Shown here: in pieces, positions 12,312-33,538 of the stretch
Layout of the letters: the number at the start of each line of letters is the position of its first letter
Numbering within the stretch: position 1 is the first letter of the stretch
Assembly: GCA_964199315.1 (NCBI GenBank)
Contig: OZ116706.1
Coordinates: forward strand, 9,300,001-9,364,000
DNA from: Orbicella franksi
Taxonomy: Eukaryota
DNA: 64,000 nucleotides
Direction: 5' to 3'
Translations under genes and position numbers: made by a program
Notes under the pieces: model-generated
What the model was told of the DNA's origin: nothing
Databases searched by the model: none
Seen by the model: the letters and a program-made list of their open reading frames with translations, nothing else

Positions 12312-13273
12312 ACTTGACCACTTTGACGGAAATAACTCGATCTCGAACATACCTAGGTGCATGTTATCAACAAGGCTTCCAGGACCTTCATCACAGTAAC
12401 GATGCATAGTCAAGCAAAATTGTCACCAAATATTCTCCGAACAAGCGAAAAGAGATTACATGTAGTATTTTGATTCTTCGAGCTACGGGCTGAATCAAAA
12501 GGAGCTGAATAGATAAGTCGAGTATAAGAATATTCGGCCGAAACAAAACTAAACCGAACGAATACTGACTTCTTAGCCAGAACACCACAACAACTGAAAG
12601 GGTGGATCGATACGCACTTAGGAATGGGGACGATTTAATCAGCAAAAAGGGGTAAATGCCTAAAATATACTATCTTAATTACTGCTGATAGATGGTTGTC
12701 GGAAATATAAAACGTCGTAATACTTCATTGTAGCACAAGGTGATTATTCTGTTCTAAACTTCTAATCTTGTGACTCGTAAATCCTTGAAAAATTTATTTT
12801 TGGCTGAAAGATATGCCCACTGATCAGAACTTAAGATAAACTAGCGCTGGGTTGAGCATTTTGGAAGGGCATGGAGTGGGTCCAAACGAAACTTTTGAAT
12901 GCCCGTTTCAATGACGTCCTTCGCAGATGTCTCGCTACGTCACTTGGAAGCTTCTTTCGTGGATCTACTTCGTACCCCTGTGTGACCAGAACTTGGAATA
13001 TAAGAAAACCTAAGGTGTTTAATTGCCCACGTAATTGAATTAGTATACTATAAATTCAGCTTAGCTAAGATGAAAGAAATTCAGGTTAATAAAACAGTTC
13101 TTCAAATCTACCTTAACACTAGATACCTGGGAAAACTTGTTATGATTTTAGTTTGGAAAGCACAACCACACACGGTGTCTTCCACGCATGATAAAAAAGG
13201 ACCCGACTAGCAATTCTGTTGGCCTTTATTGAACGGTTTCCGGGTACATTTATCAATGTCAAGTCAGTCGGTG

Positions 13274-13291
13274 TAATTACATTAACAGCTG
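13274..13291 (+). promoter_or_regulatory. P3 paired-class palindrome TAATTACATTA plus E-box CAGCTG upstream of G2
   Basis: Conserved in paralogous positions at 18854 (TAATTGCATTAACAGCTG) and 26193 (TAATTACATTAGCAGCTA). Confidence 0.55.
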
Positions 13292-13422
13292 GTAAGCTCA
13301 CACGATCACCACTAGTATACACTGGTGTGAATTGACTGTTACAGTTTGACAGTGAGTTACACTCTCAGTCTTATCAACAAAGAAGCTCTCGTTATTTGCA
13401 TAGAAAGGTAGAAGCACCGTCC

Positions 13423-13549
13423 ATGGAAGCCAATCCATTTTCTATAGAAAGTATTCTGAAGAAAGGTTCTACCTTGAGCGTTGAAGAGGCGACAGAAACC
13501 CAACCCTCAAGATCCAACGACGCCCTATCATTAGCTGTGAAGTTGGCTG
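13423..13549 (+). CDS. DMBX: Dmbx-like gene G2, exon 1 (MEANPFSIESIL...ALSLAVKLA)
   Basis: ATG 13423, eh1-like FSIESIL, phase-1 donor G|GTAAGT. Its pairing with exon 2 at 19227 is inferred. Confidence 0.88.
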
Positions 13550-15049
13550 GTAAGTCCACTTGAACTAGGACTAATGTAGTTTTAGTTAGCGACGGAGCTT
13601 CGATGCTAAAAGTTCTCCGATGCGAAAGAAGGACATTTGCCCTCTACTAGTACATTAGCCACTCATTACCAAACGTAGCGTTCATTTTTGAAATGACCCT
13701 TGGGATACGTTTTAAGCTATTCTACCTCAGCTAATAGCTTAACTGAAACGATATATTGTCGAGCCTAATACTTCACAAAAGACTTCTTTTCAAACGAGGA
13801 TCGCTCTTCTCTTGTGCTGATGGATTTTAGTTACGCCGATTGCTTCACTGATTAAGGGCTTCTTAAACGCAACGAAGTTGATAACAAAAATAAACTGTTT
13901 TCTCGTTTCGAGTGACGTTACAAGAATTACTGAGGTAGAATAATCAATTGGATAAATGACTATGAGCAGCCTATTGCGCATCTATAACTTTAAACGAGCA
14001 AAGCGCACTCAAATTGAACTGACGTGCGCAACATTGGCCGCATGGTATGACCTGACTGTTGTGTGGTATACTTTATTTTCTCTTCCAAGATAACACAGGC
14101 GTATAACATGTAGGTTGCCAACGTGGTTGTATCCATATTTTAGGAGTAATAATTTTACCAATGATCTTGTTAACTTTACTCCAAGTGACGAGGAGGCTTC
14201 AAATTCAACGTTAATGTAAACAAGATAACAAGGGGTGAAGAGCTTCATTTCCAATTTGTTTGAGCCGAGAGCTCAGTTGCACGTGTCTCTCAGTGATGCA
14301 GTATGCAAGTGTTGACGTTTCAAGTTCTCTTTTGCGACAGCGGTTCAGCATACTATGAGAATTATTGTTGAAAATCAGAGAAATGAACGGCAAAAAACAA
14401 CATTAATGAAACGATTGCTGTTTCAAAGAAAATCTGCCAATTTCGTGACCTTCCACTAATCGGTGTTTATCACAAGACTGAACGTTCCTTTGTTTGCCCA
14501 GTTGGCGCCAGAAAAAGATACAACACGTAGATAAAACTAACAAACCATAGGAGCAAAAATACTGTTTCAGTTTACCCCCATTAGTAATTTACACAGCTCA
14601 CAGAAACTTCAGCGAACTGATTCACGGAGTTAAGGAACATTGCAGTAGAGGTTTTACGAAAGAATCACAGGCCAATTTTCCTACTCTTGCATGGTCTTCC
14701 ACTCCTAGCATACATCGAAATTAGTCGTGTTTGTTATCAGTGACCCAATCACCTGACATTGGCGACTCGTGCATTCGTGCTTCTGGCTACAGCAAACATT
14801 TCTGCGTGTTTACTCAGCGTTCAACATGCACGATAAATTGTTATGGCAGTGTCAACAGAGAAAATCTCTACGGATTCGTACTGATGGAAAAGGTGGCTTT
14901 GCCGGTGTTCGAGAAAAGATAAAGATTAAGCAACGCTAGAAGGTCAGCCTCAATTCTGTGTAGTGTGATGATCAGGAGCAGATTATGGCTGAGGGGTCCA
15001 AGGGGGCCCATTTTTGGCCGAAATCGGCTTTCTTGATGGTCTAAATGAA

Positions 15050-15938
15050 GGTTTTTGTTTTATTGGCAAATATTCTTTAAAAGCAATCAGGACCTGAGTA
15101 AAAACACTAAAACCAAGTGTTTAAACACAATGAACGAGATTGAAAGAAAAGCGGAAGTTTGTGGACGATGTGTGAAAATAATAAAGGAAAGGAGAGACTT
15201 CCTGCGATTTGAGTCAGACGGACATACAACACTCCAAGGCTTTAAGTAATTAATCATTCTTAATGAATAAATTGGTAAGTGTAGTCATACATATTGTTAC
15301 GGTGTAATTGCCTAGGAATCGATAACGTGTTGTATACAACACCTTGAACTGCACCCGAATCCAGTGAGAGTCTCGGGAATGCGGGCCTCACCATCTTTTT
15401 GTTTTTTAAAAATCATTTTAACATTGCTCTTTGCAAGATTTTCACGCAAGTGGGGCCGTCAGTATATTTGAAGGGAGTTTTGTGTTGTCCTCTATTTAAA
15501 CTGAAACAGAATTAAGACCATGGATTCTGCCTTTGTACAAGTAGGTGATGGCAGATGTAGCTCGGCGAGATTCCAAGACTGTCACACTCTAGCCGCCTCT
15601 GTCGGCACGCATTTGGGAATGAAAACAATTTAATCTTGCAAATCACAGGGGTAAATACCTTAAAATAAACTGACTAAATGGCTGGTGATAGATGGCTGTC
15701 GGGAAAACAGGACTCGCAATAAATCACAATTTCCCAGGGTCTGGTGATAGAGGGAAATTCTGTACTAATACGTTAATCCTTTGATACGAGAAAAGCTTAA
15801 GACCGTTGTTAAAGGTTAAGCTTGATTCTTGACAAATTTCTCGGGCAATGTCCCTCTTATTATTAACTTAAAACCACAACGCATCTGATAAGACGTGGAA
15901 GCATTCTGGAATTCAAGATACTGCAAGGCGAAGGTCAC
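15050..15938 (+). repeat. Paralogous copy of the G3 upstream region, left part (before the LINE)
   Basis: Collinear blocks with about 24810-25790, e.g. acgatgtg.gaaaat, ttcctgc.att.gagt.aga.ggacatacaa, gtaattaatcat, ccatggatt.tgcctt, gccgcctctgtcgg, gaatgaaaacaatttaatc, aaaataaactgactaaatggctg. The left boundary is approximate. Confidence 0.8.
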
Positions 15939-18620
15939 GTTTCTCGTTTCATGTTTATTGGTATTCCCATATAAATGGTGTTACCTAAATACATAATCGT
16001 TAAATAAAAATTCAAAAACGAAACAAATTACAACAGCAACCGGAAAGAAAAATAAACATAGTTAGTTACAAGATTCTTTATTTTAAGTTCTAGGGTTACA
16101 AAGTTCTCTTATTTGTAGTGCTTCATATGTAAAGTAACCTAGTTTTTTACAAATAAAAGTGTCAGCGTTGTTAAATAGAAATATTGTTTTCTCTGTGTTA
16201 TTAAAGGAATCAAATTTTGGATATTTCTTGATGATGTCATTTGTGACTTGTTGTCTAATATTATTGTATCGGTCACAATGAAATAAGAAATGCATTTCAT
16301 TCTCAATTTGGCTAGAACAGCAGTACTGACAAATTCTAAGAGTTTCAAGTAATTTAGGAGTACAGTGTCGCCCAGATTCAATTCTAAGATTATGATTACC
16401 AGATCGGAGTTTTGCCAAAGCTTGTCTATGTTTGAGGTTCTTTACTTGTTCTAGGTACTCAGATTTGCTTACATCTCTTTTGAAACTTGAGTAGAAATTC
16501 AACTTTCTGTTAGACCGAATTATCTCCATTTGGTGTCTTTTCATATCATTTGAGATGTGACATTTTAGTTTTTGTAAATTATGTTTGATGATTTGTTCAT
16601 TGTAATTGTGTGTGTTTATATTATGCGGATGGTTTTCGTCATCTAAATAATTTTTGATGATTTCATTGACTGTTAACATGAAAGAGGACTTTGCTTCATT
16701 TGCCAGTTGATTCGAAATATCGAGGCATTGTTTGGCAACGCTATCTTCTGGGAGAGAGACAAGATGTAGCCAAAATTTAATAATGCTTGGAAGAAAATTA
16801 AATTTTAACGACAACCGTCCTGTTTCGTTTCGAGCAGCAATATTTGGTGCTCTTCTGTTGAGGCCGAGGTAATATTTGTAAAACTGTGTATGAAGTCTTT
16901 CCACAGGGTCTTTTTCCCATTTTTTCAGGTTTATGCTATCATATGCTCCCTAGATTTCGGATCCGTATAAAAGTGTGGGTTGAAATAGGGTATCAAATAG
17001 TTTATTACACATATTGATAGGAAGTTTATTGAAATCAAGATAACGTTTGGATGCGAAAATAGATCTTCTAGCCTTCTCAACTAAAGCCTTTTTAGAATTT
17101 GAGAAGCTTCCATTAGTGTTAAAAGTAACGCCAAGGTAGGTGTACTGTGAAGCCTTGGCAATTGGAGTTCCATTTAGAAAGAAGGACAATTTGTCACGTG
17201 TTGATTTACGATTTTGTTTTTGGAAAATTAGGGTTTGCGTCTTTTTTAGATTAATTTTTAATAACCTTTTCTCGCTATAATTTTGGAGGGTATTAAGTTG
17301 GTTTTGAAGACCAGCAGCACTGCTTGATATTAATATGAGATCATCTGCATAAAATAAACAATTGAGAGGAGACCCATTTGGTAAAATAATTGGATCTGTA
17401 CCAGTTGAGGATTCTAGTATGCGTGGAAATTCATCTAGATATAAATTCAATAGCAATGGTGAAAGAATACAACCTCGTCGCACTCCTCTGTTGTAATTAA
17501 AGAAGGAGCTTATTTTGTTTCCGTTTTTTATAGCGCATTTAGTTTTTGAATACATATCAGTGATTAAACGATAAAACTGTCCTATTTTATTGTATAGTAA
17601 CTTGTGTAATAACCCACTATGCCAGATAGAGTCAAATGCTTTTTGAAAATCTATGAAGCAGCAAAATAATTTGCCTTTGTTTGTATGTTTCACATGTTTG
17701 TCAATTAGTGTTCTTAAGGAAAAGATGTGGTCGGTTGTTCTGAAACCGTTAAGGAAACCAATTTGAGAGGAATGTAATAAATTGTGATTTTTAAGATAAG
17801 TGAGTAATCTTTTATTTAAGACAGCCGAGAATAATTTACCCAAACAGCTAGTGACACAAATGCCTCTATAGTTCGATGGATTAGACTTGTCCCCTGATTT
17901 GAAAATAGGACTTATTACTCCAGTAGACCAATTATCTGGATAGATTCCTTTACTGAGTAGGAAATTAAATAATTTTGTTAAAGAGGTAGTCAGATAAGGA
18001 ATTCCACATTTTAACATTTCACTCCTTATTCGGTCAAGGGCGACAGTTTTCTTATTTTTGAGCATTTTTATAGAATGTTTAACTTCATCCTCAGAAAAAG
18101 GTTGATCTAATTCAGCAAATTGTGACAGGATTGTTTCTCTGTCTTCTAACTCTTTGATTATTTCATCTTGTTTCTCACAGAAGATTATCGGCATTTGGTG
18201 CCGAATGTAATTGTTGAAAATGATTGTATAGCTTGCGCAAAGGAACATTCGAGTCAGGTGAAGCTTTTTTCTGAGTCGATAAATATCTTAAATTGGTCCA
18301 AAACTCGGTTGAGGTTCTAGTTTTAATGAGTTCGTCAATTTTGTTATCCCGATATTTGAGTTTTTTATGTCGTAATAACTGTTTGTACTGTCTTCTTACA
18401 GACATATATTCTAGTCGAGTTTGCTCGTCGAAAGGATTTTTATGGGTTTTATGTGAAAGGCGGCTTAAAAGTTTTCTTACATTACTGCAGTCACTATCAA
18501 ACCAAATTTGAGAGTGCCTTTTTTCGGAGTTCTTGTTCACTTTTACCAATGGTAACGAATGTTTGGCAGCAGTTTCTAATATTGTTATGAACTTATCTAC
18601 TATTTCGTATCTGTGGATCA
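15939..18620 (-). mobile_element. 5'-truncated non-LTR retrotransposon (LINE; RT plus C-terminal CCHC knuckle; clade uncertain, RTEX/CR1-group-like), antisense in G2 intron 1
   Basis: RT motifs IDFQKAFD, GVRRGCILSP, YADD, YLGV, then LRIESGRH...CQYC...HFLFHC. One frameshift near 18180 and a nonsense codon at 16950-16952 (GSEI*G). 3' end AATAAAC-ATGAAAC-GAGAAAC. No endonuclease domain present; no TSD identified. Confidence 0.93.
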
Positions 18621-18624
18621 TCTA

Positions 18625-18929
18625 ACATGGCCTCAGCGCCTAAATGTGCCATAATGTTAAGTTGGCTGTCTTATTGCTCCTTTACATCTCAGGCACAAGG
18701 ATCGATCAAACTCTGAAATCATTATCTCATCGCTTATTTCTCGATGAACCAGTTGAGTCATGACTCACATTGTAGAGTTGTAGGAGTCCATCGTCGACTC
18801 AGTTTAGATCGCATCGTTTTCCAATATTTGTCAAAACCAAATCTAATTTGGCTTAATTGCATTAACAGCTGCTAACATCAGTCACGGTTATCAAATTTGT
18901 GAGCAAGATATAGTCATTCCATGAGCTAC
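18625..18929 (+). promoter_or_regulatory. Paralogous copy of the G3/G2 proximal promoter, right part (after the LINE), with P3 site at 18854
   Basis: gttaag..tct.attgctc.ttta and aaggat...aact..gaaat.attat align to about 25958-26048; P3/E-box is retained. Confidence 0.7.
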
Positions 18930-18953
18930 ATGGAATGCAATGTCTATTTGATT
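18930..18953 (+). pseudogene. Vestigial Dmbx exon-1 start (MECNVYLI vs MEANPFSI)
   Basis: attccat...ATGGAATGCAAT resembles G3 attccataATGGATACCAAT and G2 ATGGAAGCCAAT. Similarity is lost after about 8 codons. Confidence 0.45.
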
Positions 18954-19226
18954 ACGCCCGTGCACGAAATGTTTATAATTCTACCTATGACACCTCATCT
19001 CTTGTATTTAAAGGGGCTTGTTACCAAGGCTATGCTTATGCGAATATCTTGACGAATTTTAGTAGAATAGCGGACGATGATGCGCTTGATTGCCCAAAAA
19101 CTATTGAGTATCGTACCGGTGGACCAAAGGAAACATTTCATGGAGACAAAATTAAACTCCCTTGTCACATGATCATGGTCATATTATTGCTAATCAGTAA
19201 TTCACAAACGCTTACCTCTTACTTAG

Positions 19227-19405
19227 ACGTTATATTGGAAGCTCGACAAGAGAAAACTCGTCGCATACCGAGACGCACGCGCACGGCCTTCACGCACCAG
19301 CAGTTGGGGATCCTGGAGAAATCCTTCAGTAAAACACATTACCCAGATGTAGAGCTCAGAGAGCAACTGGCTGAGAAGACCAATCTGCAAGAGGGTAGAA
19401 TTCAG
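19227..19405 (+). CDS. DMBX: Dmbx-like gene G2, exon 2
   Basis: Acceptor acttag|, reads [60 protein letters not shown], donor |GTGAAC; 179 nt. Confidence 0.95.
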
Positions 19406-19765: not shown

Positions 19766-20128
19766 GTTTGGTTTAAAAACAGACGCGCCAAGTATCGAAA
19801 GGAGAAGAAAAAATGTCTCCCAGTGCATAGCAATCAGAACTATGAAAGCGAGGATGAGTACATTGCACCCACCTATCAGGTGATACCAACTCAAAACTTG
19901 TCATCTTATGTTCAGTTTAACACGCTAGTACCGTGCTACTGCAACTGTAACGGTACCGGGGAAACCGTTAGACATTTCTGCAGATTTTCGTCAACGGCGT
20001 GTACCCATTTAGCCTCACATGCTCAGCTGGCACACGCCAATGGGCTTAACAGTTTGTCGTATCCCATGTCGTATGCGAATAACCAAGTAATGGATCATGC
20101 GCACATTGCACATGTGTGGCGAGGATAA
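19766..20128 (+). CDS. DMBX: Dmbx-like gene G2, exon 3 (VWFKNRRAKYRK...HVWRG*); 222 aa predicted total
   Basis: Acceptor ttttag|GTT TGG TTT AAA AAC AGA CGC; in frame with track ORF 19823-20128. Confidence 0.95.
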   Translation, partial: VWFKNRRAKYRKEKKKCLPVHSNQNYESEDEYIAPTYQVIPTQNLSSYVQFNTLVPCYCNCNGTGETVRHFCRFSSTACTHLASHAQLAHANGLNSLSYPMSYANNQVMDHAHIAHVWRG

Positions 20129-20456
20129 ACAAGGACAGGAAGATGGGCGATCGCCTCCTGCGGGAACAAAGATCGGATAGCGTTAGTGGCGAAAATCGGG
20201 ATATGCGATACTCGTGAACTTGGTGCTTACATCAAGTCGTCTTCCGGGAAGAATTGTGGCACTCACATGCAATTTAAGAGGGAAGCGACAGCAAGGCTGC
20301 TGACCACGATTCACAGACAGAACAAGTGGAAAAAAGTGCGATTAATTTTTCCAATAACGAAAACGTGAAAAGTAAAAATAACATAAAGATGAACAATGTA
20401 AATAATTTAGCGTTTGTTATTTAATTTCGTAGAGGAAGAGATTTTCTTAACAATTT

Positions 20457-20694
20457 AACTATAAAACACTGCGACAATATGGAAAAACTTAAAACCATTT
20501 TGGTTTAAAAACATCGACGACGTTTCAACGTTCGCTTAACGTCATTATTAAGTCAACTGAGTGAATAGTATTTGTACCCATTTTATTCACTCAGTTGACT
20601 TGATAATGTCGTTAAGCGAACGTCGAAACGTCTTCGTTGTTTTTCAGCCAAAATGGTTTTACGTTTTTTCCTATTGTCGCAGCGTTTTATAGTT
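20457..20694. repeat. Inverted repeat with 111-bp arms (100/111 identical) and 16-nt spacer; Penelope-like fold-back with decayed hammerhead variants
   Basis: Arms 20457-20567 and 20584-20694 with no indels. Arm consensus gttgac TTGATAA t gacgtt aagcg aacgtc GAAACGTC gtcgat. Confidence 0.85.
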
Positions 20695-21801: not shown

Positions 21802-21978
21802 CAAGTTGAACCCCGCTATTTCGAACTCTCAAGGGAAAGCAGATACAGGCCGAAATAGCCGGAGTTCGAAATAACTCAGGGTAAATGACTGAGGGTCAAA
21901 TCCAAGAGAAATGGTTTTGTGTTTGAAATAACGGGGAATTCGAAATGACCGAGTTCGATTTAGCGGGGTCCAACCGCA
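21802..21978. mobile_element. pogo/Tc1-mariner-type MITE (related copies at about 32780, 33150, 43025)
   Basis: TIRs agttgaaccccgctatttcgaactc ... gagttcgatttagcggggtccaac, with internal ttcgaaataac repeats. Confidence 0.7.
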
Positions 21979-22784
21979 TGGCCTTTTCGTCAAGACAGGC
22001 ACAACTGTCCGTATTAAGTGGGTGTGCATTCATTCTAACAGCTCGCTTCATTCGGACACTGGGATAACACGCATACTGATGTGTCTTAATATAGGTGACT
22101 TTATAAAAGTAATTGTACTTAACCGTTGGATTGTTATGAAATGATTAGTTAACTAAATGATTGATAATAATTTCATTCTACAAAGTCTACGTACAGCATT
22201 AAATGCCGGCTCACATCATACCCAGCAAAGATTACACTTTTGCTTATGGTTACAGAAACAATTCATCAATGTCATATTTTAAATGTCAAAATAATAAATT
22301 TGTTTGTAATCTTGCAAACTCACATAATCATGAAGGACCCATGAAATATATCCTCAATAGACCCTCACAGTTACAGCTCTAGTGATTCGGTTTAAAAGCG
22401 ATGTTATGTGCATGAAGTAAATCAAATGGTAGTATAGTGCCAATGCATTTCAGTTTCATTTCAAGTTCCAAAGAAAAGAAAAAACGCCTTCGCGCCAGAG
22501 GATATGATCCTGGAGAAAAGCATTTTCTGCACGATCCACCCAGACCCTGTTTTCAGCTTGGCTATAGTGTCATTGTTTTGGTACCACTCGGTTTCGTTAG
22601 CAAAGATTGCCCATTGCCCCATCTCACATTAAGTTCACGCAGTCATCACTAAGCTCAAAGCTAAGAGAACAGGGCAGACATTTAATGGGAGTAGTTTTGG
22701 TGTGGCTTGCTAGCCACACTAAGTCGGCATCCCCAAGTTTGTTAGGTTACGGGAACACGTCGCATATTTGTTAGCTAAGATCTT

Positions 22785-22855: not shown

Positions 22856-25800
22856 TTTTTTTTCTTAACCATCGTATTTTTTTTCTTTTCTTTTCTTGTT
22901 TAACCTTTTTTTTCAGGTTAGGGACCGACAATCTGATAACACGGTTTTTGATGTTACCTGACCTTGCTGTTACGCATAGTCGACATCAAATCGCACCCGA
23001 TGGCTTAATTCATGGGGAAAAGAATCCTCGATTTCTCTGAAGATCTTTCGCAGCTACCCTGCGAGCAGCGTACGTATCAACGTACGTATCCTGACTTGTC
23101 GCCGGAACACACGCAAGGCTTAGAGAACTCGATCTATCGCGTGAAGCAGACTACCTTTCGTCTTCAGGCGACAAGAAAAAAATGTTGGGCAACCTTCAAT
23201 TTATCGGTTTCAACTAGGTAACGAGAAGTTTCCAAGGTAGAGTGGGTCAATGTAGAATGAGTAAATCCATCAGAACAATGCAGTTGCTTCCCGGTTCTTG
23301 TAATTCATGTAGTCTACACGAAAAGTCATTCGAGAGGAGTCAACATAAGGACCGATTCACTTGGTTTTCCATATTTTGTTTTCTTTTTAGTTGTAGCAAG
23401 TCAATAAAATATCTCGTATAACTGGAATACACATGTCCGCAATGCGGACCTATATTTTTAATTTCTCCCCGAGTAACAAAATATACAGCAAATCGAATGA
23501 TGTGGTATTTTTATGGGAAATAATGTAAGTGATTCAACCCCTTGTCAGATGACGTTTTCCGAACAGTCAAATAATTAAATTGCTTCCTCAAGGTCAAAAC
23601 AACGTTCGCTACTTATCTTATGGATAAAGAACTACAGTAAAATATCAACGGTTTAAGACAATTACCAACAAAAGCGCTTGGTAATCTCATTAATAGAAAG
23701 CAACCTTTTTCGTGCACGTGGCGAAGGGTCACTACGACAGAGAAAAAATGTAAACAATATAACAAGGAGTGAGGAGGTCACTGTTTCAATACCTTCGAGG
23801 AAGTGACACTGTTCAATGATTTTCTTGAATAAGTTTACCGTTAAAGCAGGAAAGCAGGACATTGAATGCTTAATGTAAATAAGTTACGTTTCCACAACTT
23901 CGTATCATCACGCCGACTTCGTGCTCTACTCGATTTGATCAGTTATTTTTTTTATCGGAGAAACACTTCTGAGATTAAGTTTACCATCTTGGCGCCAGAA
24001 GACAAAGATAGACCATGGTGATGCAATACAAGATCGCTTCTAGAGGAAAAAAGAAAAAAAGAGAGGAAATATTGAGAATATTACATGTAACTAGCTAAGG
24101 AGAAGAGACAACTTACTCGACTAACTTAAATTGTAAAACAAATATACTTTAAAAGTTAGATGTATTTCTGTTAGAGTAAAATCACGACAGATTTTGCATT
24201 TTTTGCATCATTCACTCCAGTTAATTGCTCTATTCATGAAGTCTTATTCTTATCTTCTAATCAAGGGCCTGCCCCTCAAAACATCTTACGAAGTAACGTC
24301 TAGCATTACCTAAAAGTTTGTTTTATAGGCTTTATAAGGTAATAAAGGTTTCATTGTTTTTCTACTGGCCGTTTGACAAATGCAATTACAGCATGCGACC
24401 TCGGCTCTTCGGACAGTGCATTCAGGCGGTCGGCGCTAATTAATTACTTTATTGGAACACTGCATGGTAAATTCTAAATGGACCCGTGGTCTGGAACAAC
24501 AGATGGAAATATTTGCAGCATAGAGAAGCAAGCCAGGTGGTACTTTGTCCCTTTGTATAATCTGTTGCCACACATTTTTTAAAGAATATTTGACATAATA
24601 TTCGCCAAGAGGTAAAATGATAATATGTAAGGCTAAAGAAGAAGGAAAAAATAATATAAAACGGAACGTTTTCGACTTATTGATGACAGAATCTTGAGAA
24701 CTTTTGGTTTTGTGATAAAATAACTTTTATTCTACGACAATTCAAGCCGCTTGCAAAATGTAATATTTCGCTCACATAAAGGTAACCAGAGAAAGAAAGG
24801 TAAAGAAATCAGCATGTTTTATTGATGCGTTATTTGCTGTTTTCTTGGTACAATCTCTGTGAATTAATGTAAAACTTGTTTTTTGAGTATAAACAATATC
24901 GTTAAATCCCAAGCTGAGCTTTAACCTTTTATACGATGTGCGAAAATCGTGAATGAAAAACGATTTCCTGCAATTGGAGTAAGATGGACATACAATATCC
25001 TAAACTTCATGTAATTAATCATCCATAATTAATAAATTGAAAAACGATACATGGGGTAAAACGGGTCCCACACACATATTGGTATTATTTTTTCACTGAT
25101 TGTGTTAACATGTATTAAATAATAAATGGTAGATACTGCTTCCAAATACCATTTGAAAAACTGGTGAAAATTGTTTTTAGAGAGTCTCAATGAAACTAAT
25201 TATAATCCTGCATTGCGAGATTCAATATTTGTTGGTTCTTAACTCCCCTTGGTAGAAACATACAAAGCAAACGTATTGCATACTAAGAACATAGGTTGCT
25301 TCTTCTCTTTGAAAAACTAATGAATCAACAAGAGATCCTGAACACAGACTACAGCTGTGACACAATAGCACTCTACTTTCTTCATTTGCTGCGCGACATT
25401 TCTGCTCATTTGCACTTGTAGCAGAAAGACTCATAAAACGGCTAGTTGTCGCTGCATACTTACATGTTTAATCTGTTTAGTTCCTTTACTTTACGGATGT
25501 TCGGCGTTTATTCGTAATTAAAACCATGGATTATGCCTTAATTTATAAACCGATAGGCGATAAACATCGGCGAGTATTAATGAACAAAATTCCAACACAA
25601 TCTCACACACGCCGCCTCTGTCGGTAAGCATTTGAGAATGAAAACAATTTAATCCTGTAAACAGAACGAAAACTTAAAATAAACTGACTAAATGGCTGCT
25701 GATGGATGCCGTCGAGAAAAAGCGAGACCAATAAATCATGCCTTGGAAGGGTATCACTATTGGGGGATTTGTATGCATTGATACTATAATCCTGTGACAC

Positions 25801-26192
25801 GTGAATAGTAACAGCCCCATCACATATGCCTTGCCTGATACACACCAGGTAATCCAGGTTTTTTTTCATTAAAACTTGGCTCTCTTGATAATGAAGTTGA
25901 AACATCTTGCAACTTAACTCCACAAGGAGATAAGCGGTCCTTGACAGAATGTAAACGTTAAGGTGTCTAATTGCTCATTTAATGGCATTAGCACATCATT
26001 CTTAAAATAAGTAAGGATGAAAGAACTAGGAAATGATTATTTTCTCCGTCCTTTTGGAGCAAACGTCTACGAATTAGAGTGATTTATGTTATGCATTGCA
26101 CGATTAAAAACGTCCTTCAAAGCTGCTGTTACGTTAACTACTGGCATCTGCGACAGTTTCTGGAGCATTTATCAATGTCAACGTGCGTGGCT

Positions 26193-26210
26193 TAATTACA
26201 TTAGCAGCTA
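26193..26210 (+). promoter_or_regulatory. P3 palindrome TAATTACATTA upstream of G3
   Basis: Shared with G2, together with an upstream tttatcaatgtcaa block and a downstream gtaagct.acacgatc block. Confidence 0.55.
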
Positions 26211-26395
26211 CAGCAGCTTGTAAGCTAACACGATCTGATTATGAAAAGCACACATGACACACATATACGAGCGTCTGCGATGCGAAGGTACATGCATTGC
26301 AAGTATTGAGGTGCTGCAGTCAGGGATAGAACACAATCTGACAGTCTGTCAGAAAAGAATCAAATACATCGAAGGTAGCGGTACGCTATTCCATA

Positions 26396-26522
26396 ATGGA
26401 TACCAATCCATTCTCAATTGAAAGCATTCTGAAAAAGAACTCGTCCACGCCGACTGATAACACAGAGGAACCCAAACCTTCGAAATCAACAGAGGCCCTT
26501 TCACTCGCTGTGAAACTAGCTG
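26396..26522 (+). CDS. DMBX: Dmbx-like gene G3, exon 1 (MDTNPFSIESIL...ALSLAVKLA)
   Basis: ATG 26396, 127 nt as in G2, donor G|GTAAGT. Confidence 0.92.
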
Positions 26523-28535
26523 GTAAGTTGCAATTTATCCAAGATGACGCTTATTCAGGTCCATACATGTAGTAAACCATAAGTGTCTAATGAAAGATGT
26601 CTTGTGTCGATTAAGTTAGATCCCAGAATCCGCGTTAAAGGTGACAAATAAAAGAAAAACACACTAGGGCATTATTTTGAGATCAGATCGTCTGGGAGAA
26701 GAAACTGTGCAACAAATTAAATGTGTTATCATATCCCCCTCGTCCGTAAAATAATTGATGGTAAGATGTTGAATGCGACGTTTAAATCTCTAAGTTTTAG
26801 CCTTCTGAGATCTATAATCTCAATCAAAACAAATCGCATGTTTGAATAACAGAGTGCGTACTTCAGTAGAATAGAACAGGATTGCTATAATGGTGCTCGG
26901 TTACCTCGATGGACTATCTTAAACTCTTTATGGCCCATCAAAAACGAAACGTGAGCAGTTATTTCGTAGACGTTTAGCTTTATGTCAAATCAAAACAAGT
27001 TGCCTCTTGGCAAAACAGAACACCTTATTTAAATAGGAATAAATGATTACAGATTAAAGCTAGGTTTTCTCCCCGAATATCTGTTAATCTTCTAATAGTG
27101 ATGGTTCATCGTACGAGACTATATTACCGATTCAAAGAAAAGAAATGCAAGTTCTAATGTAATGAACGCAAAACCGCATAATTAGTAATGGTATTCCAAG
27201 GAATAGTTTGGCAACATCATTACTCGTAGATAGCATTTTCGCAGACTCGCTTTTGCAATGTTTCTAAGTTTAGTTACTGAGTACTTTGATAAGCCCTTTT
27301 AAATGCTATTGCATCAATGATGTGAGCCTTGGGCTGTTGAAGCTGACTAGAGCGGTATAAGGTTTGCTGAATGGCTGAACACGCACCGATGTCTGCTAAG
27401 AGTCAATGCAAACAAGCTAACAAGGAGCGAAGAGCTATCTACATCTTAATGAGAAATCCATCTTCAAACACCCGTAATAAGCAGAATGTCAAAAGTATCT
27501 TCATCCAGGCTAACCTCTAGGCTCATTAAACCGAAGCGAGGTGATCTCGTTTACAAATTTTAAGGATAGCAATCTACCACACCTGGTTATTTCTTTATCG
27601 CGAAGTTTATCAAAACAAAATGTCTTTTTGAACCAATCTGGCGCCGTAAAAGTATGCAAAATGGCTATCCGTTTAAACGAGCTGATGTCAAGGACACTAA
27701 ACTTATTGTGGTTGACATTTAAGTATGGTTTTACATTAGATAAAATGGAGCAGCACGTTTGAAGCCCAAGCAAGTTGGTCCAGTGGGGGCGGCCACCTTA
27801 TATTTAACACTGACAGAGATGCAGAGATGTCTGTCTGAAATATAGATTAAAAAGCCCTAGCAGCCCATTATAGGCGTACTGTATCTGTTATTCTACTTCC
27901 TAAGAGGTACCATAATGAAATCAAAAATTGATTATCCTGTCTAATTAGCATTCGTCACGACTATAAATATTGTTTTAGACTATTATGACTTGGTCATATT
28001 CAGTCTAACACTCACTTATTTTGCTGTAAAAATGAAAATACCTTTCAAGATGCCAGGTCATACACATGTTTATCTCCAAGCGGTACCAAATAAGGTGCTG
28101 GTAATCCCACCGGAGTATGATGACGAGAACATTCCGTCAGTTTGATACTAGATCCCCCACCTCCCCCCCGGACATTGGTGCTCTTGGCAATTTTTCAATT
28201 CTGTTTGATTGATGGAAATGATCTAAAGGACGCAAAAAGACTATTTTTGCCAGTTTGATTCATGGCGAAAGTGGGCCTCAGACTCCCTCTGAATCTGCTT
28301 GACCACTAATATACGATAACGAGAGCCTCGTATACTTCCTATATATCGCAGTTTTCTCTAAAAAAATTAACGACTGGAATTAATTTGATTTTTGTTTTGG
28401 GTTCCCTCGTTAAAAATTATTTTCGTTATTATTATATATATTACTGGCATGTTACACAATGTCCCACGCAGTGCAATGAGTGTTTTAGTCTAACGGGTAA
28501 GCCCAATCACATGCACGATTTTTTCTCTCTCTCAG

Positions 28536-28714
28536 ACGTTATTTTAGAAGCTCGACAAGAGAAAACTCGCCGTACACCACGGCGCACGCGCACAGCCTTC
28601 ACGCACCAGCAGTTGGGAATCCTGGAGAAATCCTTCAGTAAAACACATTACCCAGATGTAGAGCTCAGAGAGCAACTGGCTGAGAAGACCAATCTGCAAG
28701 AAAGCCGGATTCAG
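28536..28714 (+). CDS. DMBX: Dmbx-like gene G3, exon 2
   Basis: Acceptor ctctcag|, reads [22 protein letters not shown]...NLQESRIQ, donor |GTAAAT. Confidence 0.95.
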
Positions 28715-28978
28715 GTAAATAGATTACGTGATGGTTTACAACTAAACTAAAAGTTGCAATGAACGACGTTTACAAAACGACAAAATGAATAGTGCTTATA
28801 GTATCAGGGTTTACATTCTAAGCTACGCTGACAAGCGTTTGCTCGTTTGGTTGTTTGTGGCTTAATTCAAAGGAAGTTAAACGAACGTTCAAACCATTTT
28901 CACGTTTTAGCCGAAATTAAAATTATTGGCTCTTTGAACATATCAATGTTTAATTCATTCTTCACATCTCGGTTTTAG

Positions 28979-29314
28979 GTCTGGTTTAAAAACAGACGTG
29001 CCAAATACCGCAAGGAAGTAAGAACGTGTCTTCCACAAGACAGCTACGACAGTGATGAGGAGCACATTTCTACTGCTTGTCCAGTGACACCGACCCAAGC
29101 CCCGCCGTCTTGTTTTCAGTGCAACACAGTTCCATATTATTTCAACTATAACGAGCCTATAGACTCAATGAGATCTTTTGGATGTTCCACGAGCATGTAC
29201 CCCACACTCACTTCACACACTCAGTTGGCACCAGCACATGGAATACACGGTTGGCAGCCAGTTACAAACCTGATGATGGATCATAAGCATCTGGGAGATC
29301 TGTGGCGTGGATGA
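28979..29314 (+). CDS. DMBX: Dmbx-like gene G3, exon 3 (VWFKNRRAKYRK...DLWRG*); 213 aa predicted total
   Basis: Acceptor ttttag|GTC TGG TTT AAA AAC AGA CGT; in frame with track ORF 29084-29314. Confidence 0.95.
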   Translation, partial: VWFKNRRAKYRKEVRTCLPQDSYDSDEEHISTACPVTPTQAPPSCFQCNTVPYYFNYNEPIDSMRSFGCSTSMYPTLTSHTQLAPAHGIHGWQPVTNLMMDHKHLGDLWRG

Positions 29315-30767: not shown

Positions 30768-32781
30768 GTTTAGCCTCGATTTTTCAAGTTCGTCGTTTGT
30801 AATCTGTGTCAATCTTCTCCATCCTTAACCATCCTTTTTCCTTTATGGTTTATTATTTTCTCTTTGGTGCTTCTCTATCTTAGTGAAAAACTATTATTTT
30901 CAGGTTTTCAATTTAAAAGTTATTTTGTACGTGGCCAAGATATCTCAAAATGCCGTGACTGACCTCTTTTAATACCCGTCATTTAGTGTTTACTGATCCT
31001 ATTGTAGAACAAATGTTTGTTTTACGCGTTTTCGGTCAGCCAGTGCGTCAAAGTAGCTTAAGCATCGGGCAATTTTCTTATAACTGATGAAAAACTAAGG
31101 CTAATTCACAACCAATATGAAAATAAACGGTAACACGGGCGTGTCTAGACAAAATCGTGAAGTCTAGTCATTATATACGTATTTTCTAAACTTTTCAACT
31201 TATTGTATGCCTGAAAAAATAGGATTTTTAACAGTCTGGCTCACTGAAGCATATCACTGATCCTCTAAATTGCTTGGATCAATCAATATCTGATGATTGC
31301 TTTCGACGGTGCCTGCTAAAGCGCTCTGATGAGAAGAGTAGAAGAGGAAATTTTCAAAAGGTAGGTACAGTTGAACCTCTCCTTGTGGACACCTCCGCAA
31401 TACGGACACATCTATTTTACGGACAGCTGACGTGGTCCCAGAGAAACCAGAATTGATATAAACCCTACCTCTACACTCTTTTTTGTTTTATAAAAATACA
31501 TTTTATAAGAATTTATATCGAGGCTGAAGTCTACGGAATTTTTAGAATATATTACGAATAACCCGAGGCTGAGACTTTGAAAGAATATAATTTTGTGTGT
31601 TGAAAATTTGTAAATATAATACAATTATATGTTTTTAACTAAACTATGGTAAAATTCTTCCTTTCTCTAAACAGCAAAATTAGCCAAAAAGCAACAAAAT
31701 CAGAGCACTAGCCGTATGTTCGATGCTAATAACATTTCTGCAAGACGTCATGAATGTCATATCAGGCTTAAATGCCTGCAGTCTGGCTGCAAAATTACTT
31801 TAACACCATCCAGACATCAAATACATTCCAAAACAGAAATGTCATAAGCTGTAATCTAGAAATACTCACAAGAATATTTTCAGCCTACTATTTGCAGAAA
31901 AATAAGACTATTAAGCCCTGGCCGGAAAAGCAATATTCTTATATAAAAAAGAGTGTATCATACGGACACTCCGCCCGTAGGTTCGACTGTAGATTAACAT
32001 GGCAAATACTCATTTTGTTCTTTCGATTAATTCTTAATCCCACTGTCTTGAATAGTTGGCAATTATTTGCAATCTAAGCACCCCTACAACACCACCTCTT
32101 AGCAGTAGTTATAGTTATAGTCAGTATGCTTGAAGATAATTTATCGTCTTACCAAAACGTCTGATGCAGTACATTCAAACTGTTTATTTTCCTTAAATTA
32201 AGATCAAAGTTCTTCTTGACTAAAATCAGCCGCGGACCATTAGGCCGCTATATTAAATATTTATACTGCTGAAAAGTGGTCTGAAATAATACTGAAGGCA
32301 TCAGAAAACACAATTGAAATGTTCTTTCATAAACACGAAAATGGTCTTCATCGCCAAATGTTTGGAAAAACAACTTGAATTGTTGTACTTGGAGAGAATG
32401 ACGTTTTTCTATTAGACCCTGTCACACCCACTGTCGGTCAGCCGTGTATGACCATGCAAGTAAAAGCTATTGGGCGCTACTTTCACCTGACGCCATTCGA
32501 TTTTCAAACTGATGCAAAATGAGTTATTCAATTTCCCAGTTCAGTTTGCACTTGGTTCCAATTCGGAGTGAAAATTTGGAGAGACATTGAAAATATTGCA
32601 CGCATGGGACACAGGAAGCCGTTTATTTTGGTACGTCCGTCATTGTAAATAAATTTAAAGCTTCTTACACAGTAGCAGTAATTAAACCAAACAGCTTCGA
32701 TGACAAGCACCAGTACCCCTAAATATAGAATCAAGGCCATGCAAGAAATTTCATTATTTTTCGTAAATACCAGTTGAACAC

Positions 32782-33425
32782 GAAATAGCGGGAGTTCGAA
32801 ATAATTGGTTGTAAATGAATGAAAGGCAAATCCAAGGGAAATGGTTTTGAGATCTTAATAACGGGGAAGTCGAAATAACCGAGTTCGAACCGGGATCCAA
32901 GTGTTCTGTGGTCTTTATTTTGTAGTGGTTAGGATTGAAAAGGATCCTTTTGGGCTCTTTACATCGTCTTCTCGCTATCTTTCTGGGAAAGGAAAATTAA
33001 AGATTATGTAAATGCTGTTGCCTCATGCAAGGATATAAATACAATTTTGATAATTCGAATAACAAAAATATATTTATTTATTCATTACTTTTTTTGCACC
33101 TTTCTTTGTTCTTTGATAATCCATTGATTATCTTCCTACACACGTATTTTCGCTATTCCGAACCCTCGGGGAAAACGAAATAGCGCGGAAGTTCGAAATA
33201 ACTTGTAGTAACCGACTGAAGGGCAAATTCAAGGGAATTCGTTTTGAGTTCTTAATAACGGGGAAGTCAAAATAACCAAGTTCGAACCGGGTTGCAATTG
33301 TGATGTAGTTTTTAACTTACCATGGCTACTTGTCGCTATCTTTCTAGGAAAGGAAAATTAAAGATAACGTAAATGTTGTTGCCTCTTGCAAGGCTATAAA
33401 TAAAGTTTTGATAATAAAAATATAT

Positions 33426-33456
<31 letters not shown>

Positions 33457-33538
33457 TTTTTTTATTACTTTTTGCACCTCTCTTTGTTCTTTCTTTGTAT
33501 TCCATTGATTCCATTGATTAACTTCCTACGCACGTATT
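32782..33538 (+). repeat. Two-copy tandem duplication (period about 390 bp) containing a MITE fragment; (ATTT)n expanded in copy 2
   Basis: Blocks tcgctatctttct.ggaaaggaaaattaaagat and gttcttaataacggg are repeated at about 390 bp spacing. Confidence 0.8.

What the first reader, a model, noticed from the sequence alone, without database searches (positions are those of the whole stretch)
15050..19226. Hidden sixth duplication unit: G2 intron 1 contains a LINE-split copy of the G3 promoter, so G2 may be a chimera
Seen: over 1 kb of collinear similarity to about 24810-26400 on both sides of the LINE. With the LINE removed, the spacing from aaaataaactgactaaatgg to the P3 site is about 510-520 bp in both copies. 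A vestigial start MECNVYLI (18930) follows and lies only 297 bp before exon 2, versus over 2 kb in G3. Inference: three ancestral copies A, B and C existed; A kept exon 1, B kept its promoter and exons 2-3 but lost exon 1 by deletion, and today's G2 joins A exon 1 to B exons 2-3.
Basis: partly seen in the sequence, partly recalled or inferred. Interest (0 to 1): 0.75.

Follow-up and report, generated by a model that had tools for sequence, protein, structure and literature searches.

The report
Relic promoter units in Dmbx cluster
The first intron of one coral Dmbx homeobox gene holds an old, well-conserved copy of its neighbour's promoter region that has lost its coding first exon and was recently split by a LINE. 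A matching relic sits upstream of the neighbour, so the two genes probably inherited two alternative 5' ends each and kept opposite ones.

Summary
G2 intron 1 contains three collinear blocks homologous to the G3 5' region: 15154-15307, 15501-15799 and 18781-18909. A minus-strand LINE (15954-18608) splits them. The blocks match nothing else in the 497-Mb genome. The LINE is absent at the same site in three related corals.

The "vestigial start" at 18930 is not supported. No exon-1 coding relic is detectable there in any of five species.

The chimera reading is partly right. A public cDNA contig and RNA contigs show exon 1 (unit A) spliced over unit B to exon 2. However, the arrangement is not peculiar to G2.
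- A fourth 5' unit, D, lies between G2 and G3. It keeps an exon-1 relic in Desmophyllum and two other corals.
- Units A, B, C and D are each orthologous across robust corals.
- G2 and G3 exons 2-3 split before the robust/complex coral divergence.

Best model: an ancestral gene with a distal and a proximal 5' unit was duplicated whole. G2 kept the distal first exon and G3 the proximal one. The silenced units persist under constraint (B block I is 90% identical between genera, against 72-77% for flanking intron), probably as enhancers.

This is a new example of a known process, of moderate interest.

The parts
12543..12788 (+). Unit A, block I. This is the proximal promoter block of G2, and it lies upstream of the 5' end of the cDNA contig.
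   Evidence: nhmmer E 1e-57. Orthologues in L001, L002, L004-L007.
12967..13549 (+). G2 exon 1 as transcribed (at least this extent). The 5' UTR contains the P3 block 13201-13329 (P3 palindrome 13274-13284). The CDS is 13423-13549 and includes the eh1 motif FSIESIL. The donor is at 13549|GT.
   Evidence: cDNA contig L003 maps here at 100% identity. Splice joint seen in RNA contigs. P3 sites. eh1 motif.
14196..14536 (+). Unit A intron element IE (14196-14274) plus about 260 bp that is also homologous to unit D.
   Evidence: nhmmer. Alignment A2.
15154..15307 (+). Unit B, block 0. It is homologous to 24923-25067 upstream of G3 and is present only in B and C units.
   Evidence: nhmmer E 3e-39. 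Identity to Oculina/Desmophyllum is 90/87%.
15501..15799 (+). Unit B, block I. This is the promoter-type block with TAATCC and TGATnnAT-type motifs.
   Evidence: BLAST and nhmmer. Identity between genera is 90% with no indels. Shortest branches in the trees.
15922..18610 (-). Lineage-specific insertion: 32 bp of unassigned sequence plus a LINE copy (15954-18608) encoding a reverse transcriptase.
   Evidence: RVT_1. More than 40 copies at about 97% identity. Absent at the orthologous site in L007, Oculina and Desmophyllum.
18781..18909 (+). Unit B, P3 block (P3 palindrome 18854-18864). It is homologous to the 5'-UTR part of exon 1 in units A and C.
   Evidence: Orthologues found.
18910..19226 (+). 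Remaining 3' end of intron 1. It has no detectable exon-1 coding relic and no IE. The in-frame ORF from 18935 is not conserved.
   Evidence: 8-14 open codons in three relatives. A 1-nt insertion at 19125 is seen in RNA contigs.
19227..19405 (+). G2 exon 2 (homeodomain residues up to position 46). It contains an 83-nt run identical to G3 (19310-19392).
   Evidence: Permutation p 0.001.
19766..20472 (+). G2 exon 3. The CDS runs to 20128 and the 3' UTR reaches at least 20472.
22170..22485 (+). Unit D, degenerate P3 block region in the G2-G3 spacer. Block I of D is not detectable in this species.
   Evidence: Orthologous to Oculina 14854-15152 and Desmophyllum 18775-18972. D forms a clade.
23731..24090 (+). 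Unit D intron element IE (23731-23809) and a downstream stretch homologous to unit A.
24923..26247 (+). Unit C regulatory blocks of G3: block 0 (24923-25067), block I (25507-25811) and the P3 block (26120-26247, P3 palindrome 26193-26203).
26396..29314 (+). G3 coding exons: 26396-26522, 28536-28714 and 28979-29314. Its IE lies at 27388-27460 in intron 1.
   Evidence: P0018 is a near-identical spliced protein.

Best explanation
G2 and G3 are tandem Dmbx-type (K50, eh1-bearing) homeobox genes. Each locus carries two 5' units.

The distal units are A (upstream of G2) and D (upstream of G3). They consist of block I, a P3 block, exon 1 and an intron element (IE). The proximal units are B (in G2 intron 1) and C (the working 5' end of G3). 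They consist of block 0, block I and a P3 block, followed by exons 2-3.

The most likely history has three steps. An ancestral scleractinian gene acquired two alternative promoter/first-exon units, either by a partial 5' duplication or by fusing two genes. The whole composite was then duplicated. Finally the copies kept opposite first exons. G2 kept the distal one and lost the coding part of the proximal exon 1 and its IE by deletion. G3 kept the proximal one, and the distal exon 1 decayed.

The exon-less units were not erased. B's blocks are as conserved between genera as G3's working promoter blocks. B therefore probably acts today as an intronic enhancer, or as a weak alternative promoter, of G2, with homeodomain-type sites that could allow auto- or cross-regulation.

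The LINE is a recent insertion specific to this lineage, lying between B's block I and its P3 block.

Shown: the homology, collinearity, uniqueness in the genome, orthology of the four units, splicing over B, absence of the LINE in relatives, and conservation above background.

Inferred: the order of events, the deletion, and the enhancer function.
For: - Collinear homologous blocks. They match nothing else in the genome.
- The same A-B-exons-D-C layout occurs in a close relative (L007), Oculina patagonica (L001), Desmophyllum pertusum (L002) and L005.
- With three species, each of the four units is monophyletic with support of 99 or more.
- Unit D has a full-length exon-1 relic with an open frame and a GT donor in Desmophyllum (E 2.8e-15). 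It also has relics in L005 and L009.
- Block 0 is present only in B and C, in every species tested.
- IE is present in A, D and C but never in B.
- The D profile matches A over about 330 bp (E 5e-10) but matches C's intron over only 42 bp.
- The IE-to-block-0 spacing is similar in the A-to-B and D-to-C intervals: 780-940 bp and 990-1190 bp.
- The best 24-row tree has the split (A+D)|(B+C), with support 75/77.
- A cDNA contig and RNA-library contigs show the 13549>19227 joint.
- B block I is 90% identical between genera with no indels. Flanking intron is 72-77% identical with many gaps.
- G2 and G3 synonymous sites are saturated outside a short conversion tract, so similarity that survives between paralogous units is best explained by selection.
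- Acropora digitifera has two simple genes of the A type and the C type.
- Exon 2-3 trees place the acroporid beta gene inside the G3 clade. A clade of G2 with robust-coral G3 that excludes it is rejected (p-AU 0.00025).
Against: - The deep branching among A, B, C and D is unresolved. (A+D) has only 75/77 support, and (A+B) and (A+C) are not rejected (p-AU 0.20).
- No species examined keeps a coding exon 1 in B, so its former presence is inferred from the homology of B to C.
- Acropora lacks B and D. This could mean they were gained later rather than lost there. The taxonomic position of L005, L006 and L009 is unknown.
- In the exon 2-3 tree the Acropora alpha-type genes do not group with G2. 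The grouping is not rejected, p-AU 0.27.
- No transcription start was seen in B.
- Two polyA raw-read runs had no G2 reads at all.
- No activity data exist for any block.
Confidence: 0.55

Rival explanations
1. Three full ancestral genes A, B and C existed. Deletions removed A's exons 2-3 and B's exon 1. G2 alone is therefore a fusion, and unit D is unrelated to that event.
For: B is an exon-1-less 5' unit and A's exon 1 is spliced to exon 2. In the three-way comparison, B block I is closer to C than A is (76% against 58-63%).
Against: A fourth unit, D, mirrors A and is followed by C, with block 0, at similar spacing. There is no relic of exons 2-3 between 13550 and 15153. G2 exons 2-3 are not close to G3's: synonymous sites are saturated outside the conversion tract, and G2 falls outside the G3/beta clade.
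Confidence: 0.15
2. Only regulatory DNA was copied. B, and perhaps D, arose by duplication of an enhancer/promoter module into the intron and the spacer (shadow enhancers). B never had a coding exon 1.
For: No exon-1 coding relic and no IE exist in B in any of five species. B's blocks are under constraint. Acropora lacks B and D.
Against: D clearly carried exon 1 and the intron element. B includes the homologue of the transcribed 5' UTR (the P3 block), not only upstream DNA. Two separate copy events would have had to produce the same unit order twice.
Confidence: 0.17
3. Four complete tandem genes (A, B, D, C) existed. Two independent deletions each removed the 3' half of the upstream member of a pair.
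For: All four units were gene 5' ends, or are homologous to gene 5' ends.
Against: This needs two parallel deletions with nearly the same end points. It also needs independent loss of block 0 in A and D. Only two exon 2-3 lineages exist across all species sampled.
Confidence: 0.1
4. The similarity is due to chance or to a dispersed repeat.
For: None beyond the weak 22-bp post-LINE BLAST match when taken alone.
Against: E-values go down to 1e-37. The blocks are collinear and have no other genomic matches. The same blocks lie at orthologous positions in four other genomes.
Confidence: 0.01

Closest known systems
Partition of ancestral alternative promoters between gene duplicates. Examples: the aphid follistatin paralogues (PMC11874257), and from my own knowledge the teleost mitfa/mitfb genes and the duplication-degeneration-complementation model.
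   Same: An ancestor with more than one promoter/first exon was duplicated, and the copies retain different promoters.
   Different: Here the two 5' units are themselves duplicates of each other and encode near-identical eh1 first exons. The discarded units survive as conserved non-coding blocks, one inside an intron and one in the spacer. Ancestral dual promoter use is inferred, not shown.
Fusion (Lepore-type) genes made by unequal crossing-over between tandem paralogues (from my own knowledge).
   Same: The 5' exon comes from an upstream unit and the 3' exons lie next to a downstream unit. The genes form a tandem family prone to unequal exchange.
   Different: No recent hybrid junction is present. 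The arrangement is shared by several coral genera and occurs at both loci. Per-exon trees do not show 5' and 3' parts tracing to different extant genes.
Tandemly duplicated Dmbx genes of anthozoans. Six DMBX homeodomains are reported in Nematostella (PMC1779571), and tightly linked duplicated Dmbx1 genes in Acropora millepora are mentioned in PMC6214176.
   Same: The same gene family and the same tandem organisation.
   Different: Those reports, as far as I read them, count genes. In the searches I ran I found no mention of exon-less 5' units or relic first exons in the cluster.
Old promoters reused as enhancers, and shadow enhancers (from my own knowledge).
   Same: A promoter-derived block is kept under constraint without its exon, close to the gene it probably regulates.
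   Different: Activity is untested here.

Membership tests
Dmbx-type K50 paired-like homeobox gene (G2, G3) | Homeodomain | tested here: met
   PF00046 is precomputed for P0006, which differs from the G2 model by one residue, and for the other hits.
Dmbx-type K50 paired-like homeobox gene (G2, G3) | Lysine at homeodomain position 50, and the PRD-class intron at position 46/47 | tested here: met
   RIQ|VWFKNRRAK, with the intron after RIQ, in all five genes.
Dmbx-type K50 paired-like homeobox gene (G2, G3) | N-terminal eh1 (FSIxxIL) motif, and orthology to genes that sources name Dmbx | tested here: met
   FSIESIL lies in exon 1. Sources name P0023 and P0027 'diencephalon/mesencephalon homeobox'. 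No formal tree against bilaterian Dmbx was made.
LINE (non-LTR retrotransposon) | Reverse transcriptase ORF | tested here: met
   RVT_1, E 2.3e-35, in the ORF 16950-18248 on the minus strand.
LINE (non-LTR retrotransposon) | Many genomic copies sharing the 3' end, with variable 5' truncation | tested here: met
   More than 40 copies at 95-98% identity. Nearly all start at the same 3' end (query position 905).
LINE (non-LTR retrotransposon) | Target-site duplication, and an empty orthologous site | tested here: inconclusive
   The empty site is clear in L007 and Oculina. No duplication is recognisable, and 32 unassigned bases lie next to the 3' end.
Fusion gene of two tandem paralogues | 5' and 3' exons trace to different parental genes in per-exon trees | tested here: inconclusive
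   By eye, exon 1 of G2 resembles the alpha-type first exons (listing). Exons 2-3 of G2 fall outside the G3/beta clade but do not group significantly with alpha.
Fusion gene of two tandem paralogues | Relics of the lost halves: exons 2-3 of the upstream gene and exon 1 of the downstream gene | tested here: not met
   No exon 2/3-like sequence lies in 13550-15153. No exon-1 coding relic lies in B in five species. Only the 5'-UTR-homologous P3 block remains.
Partition of alternative promoters/first exons after duplication | Each duplicate locus carries both 5' units and uses a different one | tested here: met
   The A+B and D+C layout occurs in four to five species. G2 uses A. G3 proteins start at C's exon 1.
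Partition of alternative promoters/first exons after duplication | Units pair as (A,D) and (B,C) | tested here: inconclusive
   Structural characters agree: block 0, and the extended IE homology. The tree gives 75/77 support and the alternatives are not rejected.
Partition of alternative promoters/first exons after duplication | The ancestor used both promoters | not testable with these tools
   This needs outgroup transcript data.
Conserved non-coding regulatory element (unit B) | Conservation between species above the local background | tested here: met
   B block I is 90% identical with no gaps and B block 0 is 87-90%. Intron segments are 72-77% identical with many gaps.
Conserved non-coding regulatory element (unit B) | Enhancer or promoter activity | not testable with these tools
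   RNA-library contigs cover 14319-15983, but DNA carry-over cannot be excluded.

The most novel reading that the evidence does not exclude
The ancestral scleractinian Dmbx gene of this subfamily had two active alternative promoter/first-exon units. After tandem duplication, G2 and G3 divided them reciprocally. The two silenced units have been kept since before the divergence of several coral families as homeodomain-site-rich enhancers. They would then link the two paralogues in a shared auto- and cross-regulatory circuit. This would be a fossil record of promoter-to-enhancer conversion in a cnidarian homeobox cluster.
Probability: 0.35. Interest if true: 0.55.

Novelty: new member of a known kind. 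Interest (0 to 1): 0.42.

Why it matters
This locus shows the steps by which tandem developmental genes diverge in their regulation, which is rarely visible. Duplicated 5' ends, reciprocal loss of first exons, and survival of the discarded promoters as conserved non-coding blocks can all be read from sequence across several coral genera.

For annotation, it means the first exons of G2 and G3 are probably not positional equivalents. It also means the long first intron of G2 holds a candidate enhancer rather than junk.

It gives concrete elements (B blocks 0 and I, the P3 blocks, the IE) to test in coral or Nematostella reporter assays. It is still one more example of known processes, not a new principle.

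Tried and rejected
- **Dispersed repeat:** rejected. The flanks of the LINE match only themselves and G3 upstream in the genome.
- **Vestigial start codon at 18930:** not supported. Local alignment is no better than shuffles. Exon-1 profiles find nothing in B in any species.
- **97-codon in-frame ORF 18935-19226 as a coding extension:**
  - It is unlikely by shuffling (30 of 20000).
  - It is only 12, 8 and 14 codons long in L007, Oculina and Desmophyllum.
  - G3 has a comparable 76-codon open stretch.
  - RNA contigs carry a 1-nt insertion at 19125.
  - I treat it as chance.
- **Low dS of exon 2 as evidence that exons 2-3 are young:** rejected.
  - The 15 differences cluster at both ends, around an 83-nt identical run (permutation p 0.001).
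  - Exon 1 and the start of exon 3 are saturated.
  - This points to a short gene-conversion tract.
- **Homologues of the blocks upstream of G1, G4 and G5:** none found.
- **Deep tree of the four units:** unresolved with 168, 300 and 382 columns.
- **Raw polyA RNA runs X21 and X23:** no G2 reads, so no transcription-start information.
- **Look-ups that failed:**
  - The look-up of sequencing runs was busy once.
  - The Montipora (P0027) and Nematostella (P0035) loci were not on record, so no outgroup locus could be examined.
- exhausted.
Full report
**Setting.** The window is G000:C9:9300001-9364000 of a 497-Mb coral genome. It carries five co-oriented homeobox genes on the + strand. Each has the intron after RIQ of the homeodomain and a lysine at position 50, and four have a recognisable eh1 first exon. 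Sources name their relatives diencephalon/mesencephalon homeobox, i.e. Dmbx. Expanded and tightly linked Dmbx genes are already known in Nematostella and Acropora (PMC1779571, PMC6214176).

My gene models are:
- G2: 13423-13549, 19227-19405, 19766-20128 (222 aa).
- G3: 26396-26522, 28536-28714, 28979-29314 (213 aa).

**The observation.** Sensitive BLAST of 12-20.5 kb against 22-30.5 kb gives two collinear series.
- The first links G2's own upstream region and exon 1 (unit A) to G3's (unit C).
  - 12607-12782 matches 25621-25806.
  - 13233-13307 matches 26153-26235.
  - 13423-13555 matches 26396-26528.
- The second links G2 intron 1 (unit B) to the same G3 sequence.
  - 15165-15274 matches 24933-25039 (78%).
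  - 15510-15795 matches 25516-25808 (70%, E 2e-37).
  - After the LINE, 18849-18870 matches 26188-26209.

The post-LINE block also matches unit A (13248-13311 to 18826-18893, E 1.5e-5). All three copies hold a P3-spaced TAAT/ATTA palindrome, at 13274, 18854 and 26193. Three-way alignments are convincing. Profiles built from them find exactly three copies in the window.

The LINE encodes a reverse transcriptase on the minus strand. More than 40 genomic copies at about 97% identity fix its limits at 15954-18608. Spacing from the shared 20-mer to the P3 site is 503-537 bp in B without the insertion, against 517 bp in C.

About 0.55 kb aligns, in three blocks. The 'vestigial start' at 18930 is not supported.

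**Transcripts.**
- A JGI metatranscriptome contig (L003) maps at 100% identity to 12967-13549, 19227-19405 and 19766-20472. The exon 1 to exon 2 junction across B is therefore real.
- The P3 block of unit A lies in the 5' UTR, and block I lies just upstream of the known transcript. By homology, B retains a promoter block and a 5'-UTR block but not the coding part of exon 1.
- RNA-library contigs of two runs show the same joint (13549>19227). One shows a second GT..AG joint, 14942>19227.
- Two raw polyA runs had no G2 reads.

**Other species.** Proteins found with the exon-2 ORF fall into G2-type and G3-type groups. P0006 differs from my G2 model at one residue.

The loci of Oculina patagonica (L001), Desmophyllum pertusum (L002), a closer relative (L007) and L005 all show the same architecture:
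- unit A with exon 1;
- unit B inside intron 1, without exon 1;
- exons 2-3;
- unit C with G3.

None of them has the LINE. Window 15921/18642 abut L007 9645/9662, and window 15922/18653 abut Oculina 12225/12256. The LINE is therefore recent and the relic is old.

**A fourth unit.** Profiles also detect a unit D between G2 and G3.
- In Desmophyllum it has a full-length exon-1 relic (19036-19161, E 2.8e-15) with an open frame, a degraded eh1 motif and a GT donor.
- L005 and L009 also keep relics.
- In the window, D survives as a degenerate P3 region (22170-22485) and an intron element.

That intron element (IE, with a GTAAACA-containing core) occurs after exon 1 in A (14196-14274), in D (23731-23809) and in G3 intron 1 (27388-27460). 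This holds in three species, and IE is never found in B. Block 0 occurs only in B and C. The D profile matches A over about 330 bp but matches C over only 42 bp. IE-to-block-0 spacing is similar in the A-to-B and D-to-C intervals.

**Trees and dates.**
- With three species, each of A, B, C and D is monophyletic with support of 99 or more. All four therefore predate these genera.
- Their mutual order is unresolved. The best 24-row tree has (A+D)|(B+C) at 75/77, and the alternatives are not rejected.
- G2-G3 synonymous divergence is saturated in exon 1 (dS 1.5) and at the start of exon 3.
- The low value in exon 2 (dS 0.41) comes from an 83-nt identical run flanked by clustered differences (p 0.001). 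This is a short conversion tract.
- Acropora digitifera has two simple genes. One has an A-type unit and one has a C-type unit with block 0. Neither B nor D is present.
- In the exon 2-3 protein tree the acroporid beta genes nest within the G3 clade. A clade of G2 plus robust-coral G3 is rejected (p-AU 0.00025). G2 plus Acropora alpha is not rejected.
- The G2/G3 split therefore predates the robust/complex divergence.

**Constraint.** Between the window species and Oculina or Desmophyllum, B block I is 90% identical without indels. That equals C (90%) and exceeds A (85%). Intron segments are 72-77% identical with many gaps. B also has the shortest terminal branches. Because paralogous neutral sites are saturated, the blocks shared by A, B, C and D are best read as selected regulatory sequence. 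They hold TAATCC, TGATnnAT-like and P3 motifs, read directly from the alignments. Assigning binding factors to these motifs is inference from known homeodomain preferences.

**Interpretation.** The simplest account of two 'half unit plus full unit' arrangements is as follows. A composite gene with a distal and a proximal 5' unit was duplicated whole. G2 kept the distal first exon and G3 the proximal one. Acropora later lost the silent units. This is alternative-promoter partition after duplication, as described for aphid follistatin (PMC11874257).

It is probably wrong about the number of units, the timing, and G2 being special. How the composite itself arose (partial 5' duplication or fusion of two genes) cannot be decided here.

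The rivals are regulatory-only copying and two independent fusions. They remain possible because the deep tree is unresolved and no outgroup locus could be fetched.

**Verdict.** This is a new example of a known evolutionary process, of moderate interest.

Noticed in passing
window 14319-14942 and 19227: One polyA RNA library has a second GT..AG joint, 14942>19227. Another has a 1665-bp contig colinear with 14319-15983. This may be an alternative non-coding upstream exon or intronic transcript of G2 between unit A's IE and unit B. Stop codons precede the donor.
   Followed up: partly
window 19310-19392 vs 28619-28701: An 83-nt run is identical between G2 and G3 exon 2, with 15 differences clustered on both sides (permutation p 0.001).
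   Followed up: yes
window 18935-19226: The 97-codon ORF in frame with exon 2 is not conserved. The open stretch is 12, 8 and 14 codons in three relatives, and RNA contigs of the same species carry a 1-nt insertion at 19125. It is unlikely to encode an eh1-less isoform (note s1-234209).
   Followed up: yes
L004 (Acropora digitifera) 10001-18970; protein P0029: The NCBI model 'isoform X1' joins exon 1 of the upstream (alpha) Dmbx gene to the tail of exon 1 of the next (beta) gene and then to its exons 2-3. The protein therefore has the EALSLAVKLA tail twice. A distal first exon may serve the downstream gene in Acropora too, or the model may be an artefact.
   Followed up: no
L002 (Desmophyllum pertusum) 13200-15520: The distance from unit B's P3 block to exon 2 is about 2.3 kb, against about 0.4 kb in the other species. 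The P3 block itself is split by about 230 bp. No exon-1 or IE relic was detected there, and the content was not examined further.
   Followed up: partly
window 15922-15953: 32 bases lie between the empty-site breakpoint (defined by L007) and the LINE 3' end. They are absent from relatives and are not part of the LINE consensus. Other LINE copies are followed there by a CAA/TTG-type microsatellite (loose ends). No target-site duplication was seen.
   Followed up: partly
window 15954-18608 and genome-wide: Several copies of this LINE family share both ends (a unit of about 2655 bp) at 97% identity. RNA libraries contain abundant reads from it, which suggests a young and possibly still transcribed family. 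No endonuclease domain was found in this copy.
   Followed up: no
window 21851-21973, 32776-33148, 33171-33538: A repeated element of about 120-400 bp is shared between the G2-G3 spacer and a tandem pair near 33 kb. It lies where unit D's block I would be expected, so it may have displaced it.
   Followed up: no
L006 6499-6591: In this unidentified coral the 6-kb first intron of the G2-type gene keeps only block 0 of unit B. Block I and the P3 block were not detected. This suggests stepwise loss of the relic in some lineages.
   Followed up: no
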